Assembly: GCA_033442325.1 (NCBI GenBank)
Contig: JAWQFM010000004.1
Coordinates: 1,488,363 to 1,552,362, forward strand
Length of the DNA stretch: 64,000 nucleotides
Direction of reading: 5' to 3'
Origin: Salpingoeca rosetta
Taxonomy: Eukaryota > Protista > Choanoflagellata
This document shows positions 1 to 4,213 of this stretch, piece by piece. The notes beneath the pieces are model-generated. The model was not told the DNA's origin, did not search any database, and worked only from the letters and a program-made list of their open reading frames with translations. Positions within the stretch are counted from its first letter, which is position 1; each line of letters opens with the position of its first letter. The position numbers were made by a program, and so were the translations under genes.

Positions 1-1906
1 TCTTGCCGCTGCCGCGCCAATACCACTTGAGCCTGTCGTCTGCCACTTTTTGGCCTGGAGTGAACTTAGAGTAGGCGTCTTTGAAGTCTTTGTTGTTGAC
101 AGTGCCTTGGCCAAGGTAAGCGGCAAAGAACTCGCCACCAAGAAACTCCTTCATGCCCTTCTTTTCGAGCACGTCCTTCTCATATCGACTGAGTGATGGT
201 GCATGAGCCTCGCCCAAGAGGTCACGCCGGTCCTTCTCGGAAATGGAGTTTTTCATCAACTTCTCCAGCTTGGCAAACGTCAACTCGTTCACTGCATGCG
301 GGTCAGGTGGTGCCATATCGGCAAGCTCTTGCACTGACATGGGAAAATCGGCTGCAAGCAGAACAGCGTGGCGCACCCAGAGTGGCTTCCCCGCAAGCAT
401 TCTCGGCGGTGCACTTAAGGTTGACGGGTAAGCAGTCTGCTTCAGACGCAGAGTGTTCAGGGCGAGGGCGCTGTCAGTGGCTGCGTGAATGATATGGCCA
501 CACACCTCGATTTGCTCGGGCTTCTCTGTACTGTTGCGCCTGTGAAGCGTAGCGGTGCCCGAAACAGACTTGGCGTCACTGGAAATGGTGAGTTCAGCCT
601 CTTGCACGCCAATTTCTGTGAGTCTAGCGCTTTCATCCATGCTGAAAACCAAATGACCCTGGGGGTTGAGGCCGACAGTGCTGAGTTCCCCAGCCTTTCT
701 CAGCACCTCGTTCAGGTCGTCCTGCAAGTTGTTTCCACCAGAGTCAAGCGCGGCCTCTGGATAGTAGAGGAAACCGAAAGCCGCACCGTCTTGCAGCCCG
801 ATGTGCAGGTGCAATGGGACCTGGGAGAAGTCAGCTCCTTGAACTTCACACGGCAGTCTAATGTTGGTGGAGTAGTCGTTCTCCGCCGAGAGTTGGACCG
901 TGTGCACTGAGGAGAGCTGCTGCGACTCGGGGTCAACGGTTGCAATTGTGGCGTGGCCGGAGATACCATGTGGCCGCAACCGTGCCATCAGATAGCGGTT
1001 CTTTCCCGGCATTTTTGCAAGCACTGTTCCGTCATCCGTGAAATGGCAAGCCTCGGCTGCTTGGCCCCCAAAGCACACATTGCCCTCCGACAGTACCATG
1101 TGCATGTTGCTCGCGCCCAGCATCGGTGCGTGGGCAGTGGATGTCGGTGCTGTGGACACAAATGCATCACAATCGTGCAGCCGGAAGACGCTTGTGCTCG
1201 CGTGCATGTGACGGAAATGGGCGACATGGGTGCGGGCGTGGTGACGTGGGTTGTGGTGCGGCTTGGACCGAGCCATGCCGCTCGTGTGCGGCTCGCCACC
1301 AGTCATGCCCAGTGCTCCTCCGTGCTTCTCCAGCTTGTTGATTGTCTGCAGAATCTCTCGGCGATGGACTGCGGGCAAATGTGTAGATGTGTTTGCAATG
1401 TGGTCAAACCGAGCGCGTGTGATCTCGGGGTAGTTGAGGCCGGAGACGAAGCCACCAGCATGGTAGCTGCGATGCCCTTCGCGAAGGTGAAGGTCATACA
1501 TGATCACGGGCCTAACGGATGTGTCAGAGGCGAGGCCCTGCTGCTGCTGCTCGGGGTTTGGAACTGAGTTGCCATCGTCCTGCGTGGGTGAGGGTTGAAC
1601 TTGCTCCACGCGGACAACGACGACCACCTCGTACTCCACTTTCACCGCAGTGCCGTCCTCGTGTATGTCCATGCCTTTGGCGCGGAGTAGCTGGGTGCCT
1701 GGCGTGAGTTGCATGCAATGGGCGAAGTGGTTCTCGGCATTGGCTGTATCCGGAGACACAGCGACCAGGTTGCCGTGTGCACTACATTAATGACAACACG
1801 TGACAATGAACAGAGTAAACATGCGTACAGTACAACGGATGAGGTCCAGAGCGAAATGAGAAGAAGTATCCCCACCCTTTCAAGGCTATGGAGCGCAAGT
1901 ATACAC

Positions 1907-1982
<76 letters not shown>

Positions 1983-3718
1983 CTTAAACAACAACAACAG
2001 CAAGAAAAAACAACAACAACAACAACTTAAACAACAACGACAACAACAACTTAAAACAACAACAACAACAAGGTGTGCTCAGGGGTGAAAACTGGGCCTT
2101 CAATGATGGCTGATGCTTCGTCAGGTGTGTGGCGTTTGCTGAGCGGCACAGCTTCAAATGTGTAGAGCGGACCAGTGTAGCTGATGCAGATTTGCTCATC
2201 TGACACAACTGCAGAAAGCAAGATAAAGGCCAGGGAGATGAGAGAGAGAGAGAGGAGCCAGGAAGCCAAATGTCAGGAATTGCTGGCAAAGCAGGGTTGC
2301 TTTCTCGAGCCCGTGCACACACACACACACACACATGCGCACACACACACACAAGACTCTCAAGCGCACCACCAAGATGGCCGTCCTGGCATATGATGAC
2401 GTCGTCCTCTTGAACAGAAGCAATTGGCACTTGATGCACAGCCCCATGCTTGAAGATGGAAACTTGTGTGTTTGGCAAGAAGCAGCCGCCACTAATGGGC
2501 GACTCAGCACTTCGTAACTGTATGCGACCTTGCACGTGCCTTTCTTGTAGATACCGTCGAGCCCTGAGGCGTGGCTGTCCAGCCAGGACGCGGCACTTGC
2601 ACCCCACTTCTCCGTGACGTTGCAGGATGTTACAGGAACTGGGGTTGGGGCTGGAACGCAGTATTTGTGGGATGTTTTCTTCTTGCCAACGTTCTCCACA
2701 TCTTTTGACAGGGCCTTGTCTGCGCTGTCTATGAAAGTCGAGGGTGGATTAATCCACACGTGCTTGCCGTCAACCACGTCTAAGATGCCTGGTTCATAAA
2801 ACGGACAACCCAACCAGAAGCACAAATGTAGAGGCATGCAGAGGAGCGACTGTGAGGGATGGTGCATAACAACAGGCACTGCAACCAGCCAAGACAGAGG
2901 TGGAGACGGAGGGGATGGATATCATTGCACCTCATGAAACACTCCCAGACGACTCCTCAATGATGAAAGTCTCACCGACGTCTGGACCGGGTGTCGCGGA
3001 AGCCACAAGCTTGCGAAAGGTGTTCAGCTCAGTCTGCCCAAAGTACTCCTTGATCAAGACGGCCAAGACCTGCGCTGTGAGAACTCCGCCTTTTGCCTTT
3101 GCCTTTTCCACAACAATCATGTTCACAAATTCCTGATTCAAAATGGTGGACTTCCACGCGTCAATGTCCTTGGTCAGGCCATTTTCCTTGAGGTGCTTCT
3201 CAAACTTCTCGCGCACCAAGTTGATGAACCAACCATTCAGCACGTCGTTGTTCCTGCAGCCAGCATCACGCGCGATGACAACAAAGAGGGTACAGAAGCG
3301 AAGAAAAGTCAGTGTTGTGAATAAGCAAACTGCCACGTACAAACAGTGTGGCGGCGGTATTGAATGAGACAATAATCAAGCGGGGCTGCGCCACGCCAGG
3401 ACAAGAGCTCTTGTGCACTTACTTGTCAAGCCATGCAGATATTTTCTTTTTGGCACCATCAGCGTTGATGGCAGAGGAAAAGTTTGGAACACCATGATCC
3501 TGACTCGCCACCTTGCCCAGCAGCTTGGCGACCGTAATGATGGCGAGGCTGTCCACCTGTTTGTTTGGTTTGTTGGGGTTGCTGACTTTGCTGAAGAAGG
3601 TCGAGTGCACGGCTGGGGAACGCTTGATTTGATCGATCAACCAGGCGACAGCGTCTGGGGTAAATTCGAATGCAAGAGACACCGCCCACATGGGGGTGTT
3701 CTGTGGCGCCAGCGCCAT
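1..3718 (-). CDS. Large multi-exon protein with an internal Hint (intein/Hog-like) autoprocessing domain; 3' end beyond the window start
   Basis: Manual model: exons 3718-3423, 3253-2976, 2788-2536, 2491-2370, 2208-~2070 and 1781-<1. All junctions are GT-AG and in phase except the one inside the CAA repeat. Hint block A GG|CFLPNTQV..PIASVQEDDVI (Cys 2484-2482); block B FTPEH (2089-2075); C-terminal block YDLHLREGHRSYHAGGFVSGLN (1498-1433). The frame from 1780 to 1 has no stop, so the ORF track omits it. Confidence 0.75.
1908..2070. repeat. (CAA)n microsatellite with interruptions
   Basis: Direct inspection; lies just downstream (minus strand) of the TPEH codons. Confidence 0.95.
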
Positions 3719-4213
3719 CGCAAAACGAATGGAGACCGACCCGCAAACCGCAAATCCGGGAAAGCAAACACAACACAAGTGATTAGGGTGAGGATGCGAG
3801 AGGGAGCGGCGCGAAGGTCGAGGGGGAACGACACTGGCCAACAGCAATGCAGCAATGGAACGAGGGCGGGCAAGAAGAAAATAGTCCAAAGCAGTGCCAA
3901 CCATCAGAGAACACCTGACTGCTTGTTGTCGCTCGCACACCAGCTCGCTCATACGCCCCACACCTTGTCTTCCTCAGAAATTGAGGTTGCCATGATCTCT
4001 TTGTCTCGTGAGGGCTTGATCCCTTGTAGGGGTGTCGTCGTTTGAAGGTGCTGATGCTGGAGCGCACTGCAGGCTTCCTTGTTATTGCTCTTCCTGTGCT
4101 TCGAGGGAGTGCAATCTGCTGATCAAGAGCGTGTTCTGCGGCTGCATGGTTGAAGAAAATGACAAACCGCGCGCACCACGCATTCGCATTCAGCCTGTGG
4201 GAAACTGCGTGAC

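What the first reader, a model, noticed from the sequence alone, without database searches (positions are those of the whole stretch)
1..3718. Hidden autoprocessing polyprotein: an intron-split Hint domain between two uncharacterised domains
Seen in sequence: the spliced minus-strand gene gives an N-terminal region of ~280 aa ending ...GG|C, then CFLPNTQV..PIASVQEDDVI, VVSDE, FTPEH, AVSPDTANAENHF and YDLHLREGHRSYHAGGFVSGLN|YPEIT, then more than 470 further residues running off the window. Established: Cys1 plus TxxH drive the N-to-S acyl shift in inteins, Hedgehog Hog domains and bacterial intein-like domains, and splicing needs a terminal Asn followed by Cys/Ser/Thr. Inference: the terminal Asn is followed by Tyr and there is no evident sterol-recognition region. 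The protein should therefore cleave itself, possibly at both ends, and could ligate its N-fragment to an unknown nucleophile rather than splice. That would make it a self-releasing effector or toxin-like system. From memory, the VVSDE / HLREG-RSYHA-G / NYPEIT motifs resemble uncharacterised fungal Hint proteins rather than Hedgehog or Hoglet, which would imply patchy distribution or horizontal transfer; this is unverified.
Basis: partly seen in the sequence, partly recalled or inferred. Interest (0 to 1): 0.85.

Follow-up and report, generated by a model that had tools for sequence, protein, structure and literature searches.

The report
Self-cleaving Hint membrane protein, new family
The choanoflagellate Salpingoeca rosetta expresses a spliced gene for a roughly 1,490-residue protein with a self-cutting, intein-like Hint domain in its middle; it belongs to an undescribed family shared with sponges, a jellyfish, fungi, bacteria and archaea, and its function is unknown.

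Summary
RNA-like contigs confirm the minus-strand exons. The Hint domain (window 2484-1433) is split by two introns, and all quoted motifs are present. The coding start is not at 3718, which lies in an intron, but in an upstream exon at 3993-3964. The window also carries a hidden one-letter frame break about 7-10 codons before Cys1. All three public runs that cover this spot have one more letter there, which keeps the frame open.

The organism is Salpingoeca rosetta. The protein has about 1,492 aa:
- an N-domain of 297 aa ending GG|C;
- a Hint domain of 203 aa ending N|YPEIT;
- a His-rich middle region of 339 aa;
- a helical C-module of 653 aa with hydrophobic helices at its end.

At least 150 relatives exist, most about 1,400 aa with the same layout and none characterised. 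Their Hint profile and a predicted structure match solved BIL domains, inteins and Hedgehog (Z 17.8 to Tetrahymena BIL2).

It is not a Hog domain, a canonical intein, Vint or PT-HINT. The likeliest action is self-cleavage at Gly297|Cys298, often also at Asn500, releasing the N-domain from a membrane-anchored remainder. The toxin reading has no direct support. In a FastTree tree the gene groups with sponge copies, which argues against recent horizontal transfer.

The parts
3964..3993 (-). First coding exon (MATSISEEDK). It lies outside the range given in the finding.
   Evidence: The loose ends of RNA contigs X17 and X18 at 3702 match 3967-3996. The ATG at 3993 is in frame and follows an upstream in-frame stop.
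3701..3963 (-). Intron (GT..AG).
3423..3700 (-). Exon: start of the conserved N-domain (NTPMWAVSL...SAWLDK)
   Evidence: A joint skipping 169 nt with CT..AC ends on the + strand in X17 and X18. Translation.
2976..3253 (-). Exon: N-domain, middle part (NNDVLNG...TPGPDVG)
   Evidence: Joints in X17 and X18
2370..2788 (-). Exon: end of the N-domain, the GG|C junction and Hint block A (CFLPNTQV...ICQDGHLG). Cys1 codon at 2482-2484.
   Evidence: X18 contig is continuous over 2370-2605 and X17 over 2576-2787. Alignment to the family.
2503..2514 (-). Frame break in the window's letters, one base short. Public contigs carry one more letter here.
2209..2369 (-). Intron inside the Hint domain; carries a (CA)n run
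   Evidence: In RNA contigs of X17 and X18, 2370 is directly followed by 2208 (table 8)
2064..2208 (-). Exon: Hint (VVSDE...FTPEHTLL), including block B T-P-E-H
   Evidence: RNA contigs cover 2080-2208 and carry 16 more letters before joining 1781, in both runs. The frame and length agree with homologue L004. The 3' end at 2064 is inferred.
1782..2063 (-). Intron inside the Hint domain; contains a (GTT)n microsatellite; weak GTTGTT donor
1433..1781 (-). Last exon, first part: C-terminal half of the Hint domain, up to YDLHLREGHRSYHAGGFVSGLN (blocks F and G; terminal Asn at 1433-1435)
416..1432 (-). Post-Hint middle region (339 aa). It starts with the conserved YPEITRARFDHIA and is His-rich (7.7% His, KPHHNPRHHARTHVAHFRHMHA). 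It is shared along its whole length only with the close homologue L004/P0001 and the sponge copies (66% identical to L004 over a span that covers it); other members match only its first part.
1..415 (-). Start of the conserved helical C-module (653 aa in all). It runs on past the window edge to the stop at G000:C4:1486816-1486818, and the three hydrophobic TM-like stretches lie in its last ~140 aa.

Best explanation
This is an expressed S. rosetta gene for a cytoplasmically made, C-terminally membrane-anchored protein of about 1,492 aa that cuts itself with an internal BIL/intein-type Hint domain.

Shown: the gene model, the Hint homology and fold, the intact catalytic residues, and the conserved four-part family layout.

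Inferred mechanism:
- Cys298 attacks the Gly297-Cys298 peptide bond (N-to-S acyl shift, helped by Thr/His of TPEH and by the block F Asp/His).
- The resulting thioester is resolved by water, a thiol or another nucleophile. This frees the 297-aa N-domain from the rest.
- In this protein, and in about 80% of relatives, the terminal Asn500 can also cyclise and cut before Tyr501. That would separate the Hint domain from the 992-aa C-terminal part, which stays in a membrane through the hydrophobic helices near its end.
- The biological point would be a one-shot, possibly thiol- or metal-controlled, release or unmasking of one part of the protein from its membrane anchor.

The biochemical activities of the N-domain and the C-module remain unknown.
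For: Gene and expression: intron-skipping contigs in two runs, and an open 1,110-codon last exon.

Hint identity:
- A profile of 25 relatives matches the spliced S. rosetta sequence end to end (E 4e-21).
- The same profile hits solved BIL2 (6y75/6tmm, E 6e-5, full length), the C. thermocellum BIL domain, and PRP8 and VMA inteins.
- Most members give sub-threshold hits to Hint-clan Pfam families.
- The AF2 model of the sponge homologue's N-domain plus Hint (pLDDT about 90 over the Hint part) matches BIL2 with Z 17.8, rmsd 2.4 A over 145 residues. 28 Hint-fold chains score Z >= 8, including Hedgehog 1at0 at Z 15.2.

Catalytic conservation over 53 non-redundant members: Cys1 49/49 aligned, Gly at -1 40/53, block B Ser/Thr 48/53, block B His 51/53, terminal Asn 43/53, +1 Tyr 48/53.

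Layout: the N-domain is homologous across the family. No member has a signal peptide, and every member has hydrophobic segments in its last 150-250 residues.

Selection: 52-66% identity to homologue L004 in all four regions, with introns at the same places.
Against: No cleavage has been seen; there is no protein-level data at all. The penultimate His that helps Asn cyclisation in inteins and type A BILs is Leu here. The block F Asp is present in S. rosetta but in only 20 of 53 relatives. Some relatives have almost nothing before Cys1 (P0172 has its Hint at residues 18-174), so releasing a large N-domain cannot be the universal purpose. Membrane anchoring rests only on hydropathy and a medium-confidence model (pLDDT 55-75 in that part). 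The S. rosetta spliced protein itself could not be folded, because it has no contiguous reference; the fold test was done on the sponge homologue. The window copy carries a frame break, which could be real for this copy.
Confidence: 0.55

Rival explanations
1. Latent toxin or effector. The Hint domain frees or activates a membrane-inserting, pore-forming or translocating C-module, or an N-terminal effector, in the manner of autoprocessing toxins.
For: The language-model search puts the C-module nearest to VasX_N / T6SS effector BTH_I2691 clusters (0.95, 192 shared features) and to T3SS HrpK1 translocators. The protein is long, all-helical and ends in hydrophobic hairpins. Distribution across gut Firmicutes, Actinobacteria, Bacteroidota and archaea is patchy. 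Some members have other N-termini.
Against: The recognition score of that language-model search was low, which the tool itself rates as weak evidence. No VasX_N or any toxin family appeared in Pfam over 60 C-modules. PADLOC gave nothing. PDB sequence, Foldseek and VIA searches gave no match beyond generic helical hairpins. There is no signal peptide. The four neighbourhoods examined hold no immunity-like or secretion genes. It is the C-terminal part that is constant across the family, the opposite of polymorphic toxins.
Confidence: 0.15
2. Hint-driven conjugation, as in Tetrahymena BUBL/BIL2. The thioester at Gly297 is passed to an amine or hydroxyl of another molecule (a protein lysine or a lipid), so the N-domain becomes covalently attached rather than merely released.
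For: The closest solved structure by sequence and by fold is BIL2. BIL2 transfers its N-flank to lysines without ATP and is switched by Zn (PMC8616854, section 2.4). The junction is Gly-Gly|Cys, or Gly|Cys in 40/53 members. A His-rich stretch directly follows the Hint domain.
Against: The N-domain is a 297-aa domain of unknown fold, not a ubiquitin-like fold (no match above Z 5). No acceptor is known. A Gly at -1 is also usual in Hog domains, which simply use it as the cleavage site.
Confidence: 0.12
3. Protein splicing. The Hint domain excises itself and joins the N-domain to the C-terminal part, either as a degenerate intein or through the type A BIL route (Asn cyclisation first, then the freed amine attacks the thioester).
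For: Cys1 and the terminal Asn are both present. Type A BILs splice at a low level without a +1 nucleophile (PMC4031507). The strongly conserved YPE(I/L)T at +1 to +5 could be tuned for such a reaction.
Against: +1 is Tyr and the penultimate residue is Leu. In BILs cleavage dominates, and the M. magnetotacticum BIL with Tyr+1 did not splice until that residue was changed to Cys (PMC4031507). 10 of 53 members lack the Asn. The Hint domain sits at the same place in all members and diverges together with its flanks, with no homing endonuclease. The Hint-less relatives of about 850 aa also lack the middle region, and their N-termini do not match the N-domain profile. There is therefore no clean empty site.
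Confidence: 0.08
4. The window copy is a recently broken pseudogene, and the transcripts come from the second copy at C4:~1.10 Mb.
For: The window's letters are out of frame at 2503-2514. A second copy of at least the 3' part exists. Public runs show two sequence forms at 2491-2513 and at 792-914.
Against: No laid contig reproduces the window's shorter form; all three runs covering the spot have the extra letter. The window also differs from all four runs at about 14 other places in the same way, which looks like consensus error or another strain. The rest of the gene, 1,110 codons in one exon, is fully open.
Confidence: 0.1

Closest known systems
Bacterial intein-like (BIL) domains, especially type A, and the BIL2 domain of the Tetrahymena thermophila BUBL1 locus (PDB 6TMM/6Y75)
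   Same: Best match by sequence profile (E 6e-5, full length) and by fold (Z 17.8). Shares Cys1, block B (S/T)xxH and the terminal Asn, has no +1 nucleophile, and lacks an endonuclease insert. Expected chemistry: N-terminal thioester plus Asn cyclisation, with cleavage dominating (PMC4031507).
   Different: The penultimate His is missing (Leu). The flanks are a 297-aa domain of unknown fold and a 992-aa membrane-anchored tail, not ubiquitin-like domains or hypervariable secreted bacterial proteins. There is a family-specific YPE(I/L)T motif after the Asn.
Hedgehog/Hog autoprocessing domains, including choanoflagellate Hoglet and the >=10 Hog genes of S. rosetta itself
   Same: Same fold (1at0 Z 15.2). 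Same Gly|Cys-Phe cleavage junction. Same logic of cutting an N-terminal domain off a Hint-bearing remainder.
   Different: Pfam Hint PF01079 is not reached: none of the six translated exon pieces, the last exon included, gave a hit at E <= 1, and relatives reach 17 bits against a cut-off of 29.7, whereas S. rosetta's true Hog genes score 75-86 bits. There is no signal peptide and no short sterol/adduct-recognition tail. A terminal Asn and a 992-aa C-terminal region follow instead.
Canonical inteins (mini-inteins such as DnaB, gp41-1; PRP8 and VMA1 in eukaryotes)
   Same: Blocks A, B, F and G are recognisable. Fold Z is 13-16 to many inteins.
   Different: +1 is Tyr, so there is no branched intermediate. 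No empty-site host protein exists. The domain is a fixed, co-diverging part of the family, not a mobile insertion.
Pretoxin-HINT (PT-HINT) domains of bacterial polymorphic toxins
   Same: An internal Hint domain placed before a large C-terminal part that it could set free. The distribution is patchy in prokaryotes.
   Different: PF07591 is only a weak sub-threshold hit, at 19.9 bits against a cut-off of 27.7. The C-terminal part is conserved rather than variable, carries no toxin domain, and has no immunity gene next to it in the four neighbourhoods examined.
Vint (VWA-Hint) proteins
   Same: A eukaryotic non-Hog Hint family. Weak Pfam Vint hits in 9 of 25 members. 8r2c scores Z 10.2.
   Different: No VWA or Vwaint region. 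The Hint domain is not C-terminal. Blocks F and G are well conserved here, unlike in Vint (PMC2362128).

Membership tests
Hint (Hedgehog/intein) superfamily | Hint beta-fold | tested here: met
   The model of the sponge homologue P0154:1-445 (pLDDT about 90 in the Hint part) matches BIL2 with Z 17.8 / rmsd 2.4 / 145 aa. 28 Hint chains score Z >= 8 and Foldseek gives E 1.3e-7. The S. rosetta sequence aligns end to end to the family profile. S. rosetta itself was not folded.
Hint (Hedgehog/intein) superfamily | N-terminal nucleophile (Cys/Ser) and block B T-x-x-H | tested here: met
   Cys at 2484-2482 and TPEH in exon 2064-2208. Family-wide: Cys 49/49 aligned, His 51/53.
Hog (Hedgehog-type) domain | Scores over the Pfam PF01079 cut-off; motifs of the Hog C-terminal (SRR/ARR) part | tested here: not met
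   No hit for any of the six translated exon pieces at E <= 1. Relatives reach 17 bits against a cut-off of 29.7. True Hog genes of this genome score 75-86 bits.
Hog (Hedgehog-type) domain | Hint at the C-terminal end of a secreted protein | tested here: not met
   992 residues follow the Hint domain. There is no hydrophobic N-terminal signal in this or 15 other members.
Canonical (class 1) intein | C-terminal His-Asn followed by Cys/Ser/Thr at +1 | tested here: not met
   The sequence is ...SGLN|YPEIT. The penultimate residue is Leu and +1 is Tyr (48/53 in the family).
Canonical (class 1) intein | Insertion in a host protein that also exists without it (empty site) | tested here: inconclusive
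   Hint-less relatives of about 850 aa exist, but they also lack the middle region and their N-termini do not match the N-domain profile.
BIL domain, type A | Cys1, block B, C-terminal Asn, no +1 nucleophile, no endonuclease | tested here: met
   Definition taken from PMC4031507.
BIL domain, type A | Penultimate His (His-Asn end) | tested here: not met
   Leu in S. rosetta. In the family this position is mostly L/V/I and rarely H.
BIL domain, type A | Demonstrated autocleavage | not testable with these tools
   Needs protein expression and mutants.
PT-HINT polymorphic toxin | PF07591 over cut-off, variable C-terminal toxin domain, adjacent immunity gene | tested here: not met
   19.9 bits against a cut-off of 27.7 in one member, and only 2 of 25 members hit at all. 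The C-module is conserved in >= 98 proteins. Neighbours are unrelated.
Vint | N-terminal VWA plus Vwaint region, C-terminal Hint | tested here: not met
   No VWA hit in any member scanned.
VasX-like / colicin-like pore formers | Match to VasX_N or a pore-forming domain by profile or fold | tested here: not met
   There is only a language-model lead. Pfam over 60 members found none. Fold searches found none, although the model has 653 aa and is partly of low confidence.

The most novel reading that the evidence does not exclude
This is a fourth class of eukaryotic Hint proteins, beside inteins, Hog and Vint. It would be an ancient four-part protein, shared by opisthokonts (choanoflagellates, sponges, cnidarians, ascomycetes) and prokaryotes, in which a BIL-like Hint domain acts as a single-use switch. 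On a thiol or metal cue it would either release the N-domain or, as BIL2 does with ubiquitin-like domains, covalently pass it to a target without ATP, from a platform anchored in a membrane.
Probability: 0.2. Interest if true: 0.85.

Novelty: new variant of a known kind. Interest (0 to 1): 0.62.

Why it matters
Hint domains underlie Hedgehog signalling and protein splicing. In choanoflagellates they have been discussed only as Hog/Hoglet, hedgling-related and Vint genes (PMC2362128, PMC4054682).

This gene shows a further Hint architecture in the closest relatives of animals. It is expressed, its nearest named relatives are sponge genes, and its prokaryotic counterparts have the same layout. 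No curated model or paper that I could find describes the family. In the S. rosetta protein set that the searches could reach, I found no model of this gene; its second copy appears only as a chimeric 'TKL protein kinase' model.

The family offers a tractable test of what an internal, non-splicing Hint domain does in a cytoplasmic membrane protein. S. rosetta can be manipulated genetically (from general knowledge, not checked here), and bacterial and archaeal orthologues exist for biochemistry. The gene also bears on how Hint modules were shared between prokaryotes and early opisthokonts.

Tried and rejected
- A 26-nt intron (2503-2528) to bridge the two frames. Rejected: the homologue keeps the 'VTYSYK' codons that such an intron would remove, and the RNA contig runs straight through.
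- Pfam on the separate exon translations: nothing.
- My first phmmer test suggested that the N-domain was unique to S. rosetta. This was wrong. BLAST and a family profile show it is homologous across the family, so I dropped the 'variable N-terminal cargo' idea as the general rule.
- The VasX/translocator lead from the protein atlas was not confirmed by any profile or fold search.
- Atlas searches of the middle region and of an archaeal N-domain: no usable hit.
- NCBIfam and PADLOC: nothing.
- Gene neighbourhoods in Taibaiella, Gordonibacter, Methanomassiliicoccus and a JGI contig: no conserved partner.
- The search for related loci with the broad Hint alignment failed for lack of a conserved stretch. 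A narrower alignment worked.
- The IQ-TREE run did not finish in time, so the tree is FastTree only.
- The spliced S. rosetta protein could not be given to Pfam, PDB search or structure prediction, because it has no contiguous reference and I did not paste it. Its homologues and local profile searches stand in for it.
- In one script I translated the gene with the extra letter that run X7 shows. All later scripts use X at the break.
- The upstream part of the second copy reads N and could not be examined.
Full report
WHAT IS THERE

The window is G000:C4:1488363-1552362 of a 55.4-Mb genome. A 99%-identical paralogue fragment is filed at NCBI under Salpingoeca rosetta. The minus strand of 1-3993 carries a multi-exon gene.

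Two public runs have contigs that skip introns at GT..AG (X17 from 2011 and X18 from 2017). They give these exons:
- 3700-3423
- 3253-2976
- 2788-2370
- 2208-~2064
- 1781 onward

Their loose 5' ends match 3967-3996. This means a further exon ends at 3964, and its ATG at 3993 is in frame after an upstream stop. The last exon is open for 1,110 codons and ends 1,546 nt beyond the window edge.

Counting the one extra letter that public contigs show (see below), the protein has 1,492 residues:
- N-domain, 1-297, ending ...SPISGG
- Hint domain, Cys298 to Asn500
- middle region, 501-839
- C-module, 840-1492

Every quoted motif is present at the stated place. The Hint domain (2484-1433) is split by two introns, 2369-2209 and 2063-1782. 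The second intron holds a (GTT)n run and uses a weak GTTGTT donor. Its exact position is inferred from 16 unlaid letters in both RNA contigs, from the reading frame and from the homologue.

Two details were wrong. First, the start at 3718 lies in an intron. Second, the window's own letters are one base short somewhere in 2503-2514, so the N-terminal frame and the Hint frame do not connect. A 26-nt intron would fix the frame on paper. It is excluded because the RNA contig is continuous over 2370-2605 and the homologue keeps the codons that such an intron would remove. All three runs covering the spot carry one more letter (behind 2506 in X18 and X13, behind 2513 in X7), which keeps the frame open. 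The window also differs from all four runs at about 14 other shared places. I therefore read the break as a consensus error, or as a peculiarity of this copy or strain, rather than as a property of the gene. I could not settle this.

IS IT A HINT DOMAIN?

Pfam does not see the separate exon pieces. A profile search with the last exon found at least 150 relatives. Most are about 1,400 aa long and match from just before the YDLHLREG motif to the C-terminus.

Aligning their regions around the equivalent of Cys1 gives clear intein blocks:
- block A: GC(F/V/L)xAGT...PIE..xEGD
- block B: PF(F/M)(S/T)xxH
- blocks F and G: YDLHxREGxxSYHANGYxxxLN, then YPE(I/L)T

The profile of 25 such regions, built without S. 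rosetta, gives three results:
- It matches the spliced S. rosetta sequence end to end (E 4e-21 for a million-sequence space).
- It hits solved BIL2 of Tetrahymena (E 6e-5, full length), the C. thermocellum BIL domain, and PRP8 and VMA inteins.
- Its members give sub-threshold hits to Pfam Hom_end_hint, Hint_2, Vint, Hint and PT-HINT.

An AlphaFold2 model of the nearest fully referenced homologue covers the sponge N-domain plus Hint, P0154:1-445, with mean pLDDT 83 and about 90 in the Hint part. It matches BIL2 at Z 17.8, rmsd 2.4 A over 145 residues. Mini-inteins score Z 13-16 and Hedgehog 1at0 scores Z 15.2. In these superpositions the intein C-termini end at residues 430-433 of the model. 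Model Asn431, the counterpart of Asn500, lies there, at or within one residue of the usual last-Asn position.

The spliced S. rosetta protein itself could not be submitted.

THE FAMILY

Named members:
- the sponge Corticium candelabrum, two paralogues
- the jellyfish Sanderia malayensis
- five ascomycetes: Zasmidium, Delitschia, Monosporascus, Fusarium and Exophiala
- the archaeon Candidatus Methanomassiliicoccus intestinalis, named 'Hint domain-containing protein' by NCBI
- a Nanobdellota archaeon
- bacteria: Bacillales, Gordonibacter, Oscillospiraceae, Blautia and Taibaiella

A metagenome contig (L004) carries a 52-66%-identical homologue with introns at the same positions.

The N-domain is also homologous across the family. 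The N-domain plus Hint profile matches S. rosetta with E 1.5e-44 over positions 34-459 of 464. The protein is thus one conserved four-part unit. Some members have other N-termini, or almost none, and Hint-less forms of about 850 aa exist.

Conservation over 53 non-redundant members:

| Position | Conserved in |
|---|---|
| Cys1 | 49 of 49 aligned |
| Gly at -1 | 40 of 53 |
| block B His | 51 of 53 |
| terminal Asn | 43 of 53 |
| Tyr at +1 | 48 of 53 |
| Pro at +2 | 52 of 53 |

The chemistry at the N-terminal junction is therefore universal in the family. The C-terminal cut is common but dispensable.

A FastTree tree of Hint-to-C-terminus sequences splits with 100% local support into two halves. 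One holds all named prokaryotes and the other all named eukaryotes. S. rosetta plus L004 is sister to the sponge pair with 96% support. Caveats: FastTree only, midpoint root, and 41 unlabelled metagenomic rows.

THE OTHER PARTS

N-domain. The model shows a helical part followed by a small beta part. No structural match exceeds Z 5.

Middle region. It has 7.7% His and begins with YPEITRARFDHIA. It is the best-conserved stretch between the two closest homologues (66% identity over a span covering it). Along its whole length it is shared only with L004/P0001 and the sponge copies.

C-module. The model (60-sequence alignment, mean pLDDT 72) is all-helical. It has a confident 270-residue domain and three hydrophobic stretches in the last ~140 residues. 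The same pattern appears in 15 other members, and none has a signal peptide. Foldseek against PDB, the atlas shape search and VIA-wide found nothing beyond generic helical hairpins. PDB sequence search hit only designed helical repeats. Pfam over 60 members gave no recurrent family, only stray transmembrane-type hits. NCBIfam and PADLOC were empty. The only toxin-like hint is a language-model proximity to VasX/BTH_I2691 and HrpK1 clusters, obtained with a low recognition score. I treat it as an unconfirmed lead.

HOW IT MOST LIKELY WORKS

Shown: the fold, the catalytic residues and the layout.

Inferred from established Hint chemistry (PMC4031507):
- Cys298 makes a thioester at Gly297.
- Water, a thiol or another nucleophile resolves it and frees the N-domain.
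- Asn500 can cyclise and cut before Tyr501, although less efficiently without a penultimate His.
- The C-terminal 992 residues stay membrane-bound through the terminal hydrophobic helices.

The purpose would be a one-time release or unmasking.

I weigh three rivals. The first is transfer of the N-domain to an acceptor, as the structurally closest domain, BIL2, does for ubiquitin-like domains under Zn control (PMC8616854). The His-rich stretch after the Hint domain makes metal control conceivable. The second is low-level BIL-type ligation of the two flanks. The third is activation of a membrane-damaging module. None of these is excluded. The toxin reading has the least direct support.

COMPARISON WITH KNOWN SYSTEMS, AND NOVELTY

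It works like a type A BIL or Hog autoprocessing domain. It is not a Hog domain, because PF01079 is not reached, there is no secretion signal, and there is no short C-terminal tail; S. rosetta's ten or more true Hog genes score 75-86 bits. It is not a canonical intein, because +1 is Tyr and no empty site exists. It is not Vint, because there is no VWA domain. It is not PT-HINT, because the C-terminal part is conserved and there is neither a toxin domain nor an immunity gene.

Full-text searches for choanoflagellate Hint proteins returned only Hog/Hoglet, hedgling, Vint and intein surveys. None describes this architecture. I rate it a new variant of a known kind: a known catalytic module in an undescribed, cross-domain protein family.

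An earlier first-stage note on the same stretch (s1-432435) called the C-terminus pore-forming-toxin-like. My tests neither confirm nor exclude that.

Noticed in passing
G000:C4:~1,099,268-1,100,961 (L015:2268-3961; L002): A second, 98-100% identical copy of the gene's last ~565 codons, followed by the same LRR-TM-TKL kinase gene, lies 388 kb away on the same contig. The ~3.4 kb directly upstream reads N, so whether copy 2 is complete is unknown. Two sequence forms seen in public runs at 792-914 and 2491-2513 may be the two copies.
   Followed up: partly
P0002 (NCBI 'TKL protein kinase [Salpingoeca rosetta]', 1749 aa): The reference annotation is a chimeric model. Its first ~514 residues are the C-module of copy 2, and the rest is the downstream LRR receptor-type TKL kinase. 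In the searches I ran, no protein model of the window's Hint gene turned up.
   Followed up: partly
L003:300-3645 (minus strand), just downstream of the gene, outside the window: A leucine-rich-repeat, transmembrane, TKL-type kinase gene with internally duplicated segments, duplicated together with the Hint gene's 3' part.
   Followed up: no
window 249, 305, 364, 607, 638, 2117, 2123, 3085, 3099, 3112, 3117, 3488, 3499, 3507: The window differs from all four public runs in the same way at these places. This suggests another strain or copy, or consensus errors in this assembly.
   Followed up: no
alignment A2 (Hint regions of 25 family members): 18 of 25 members hit Pfam AXH (the ataxin-1/HBP1 module) below its cut-off, with a best E of 3.5e-8. 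The profile also hits ataxin-1 AXH chains in PDB (E 6e-4). AXH may be a relative of this Hint type. Whether that link is already recorded I could not check; a paper search for both terms found nothing.
   Followed up: partly
G000, 10 loci (for example C19:967599-968099 and C22:948232-948735): At least ten canonical Hog-domain genes (PF01079, 75-86 bits) form a closely related family with the motifs PCFPGWAEVILESGERVQL...TPDHF...SSFA.
   Followed up: no
family members P0010, P0153, P0134, P0083, P0039: Positions ~100-200 of the N-domain profile weakly match the first helical domain of the C-module (i-E 6e-4 to 1e-2). This may be an ancient internal duplication.
   Followed up: no
L024:8001-15561; L019:6909-11097; L018:5799-8615: Prokaryotic variants. 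One member has its Hint at residues 18-174 and is followed in tandem by a 1,404-aa ORF without Pfam hits. A Blautia contig has N-domain plus Hint (579 aa) and an overlapping 839-aa ORF. An Oscillospiraceae ORF has the Hint at the end of 938 aa.
   Followed up: partly
window 1899-2079 and 2304-2362: Both Hint-splitting introns carry microsatellites, (GTT)n and (CA)n. The (GTT)n run starts right at the splice donor.
   Followed up: no
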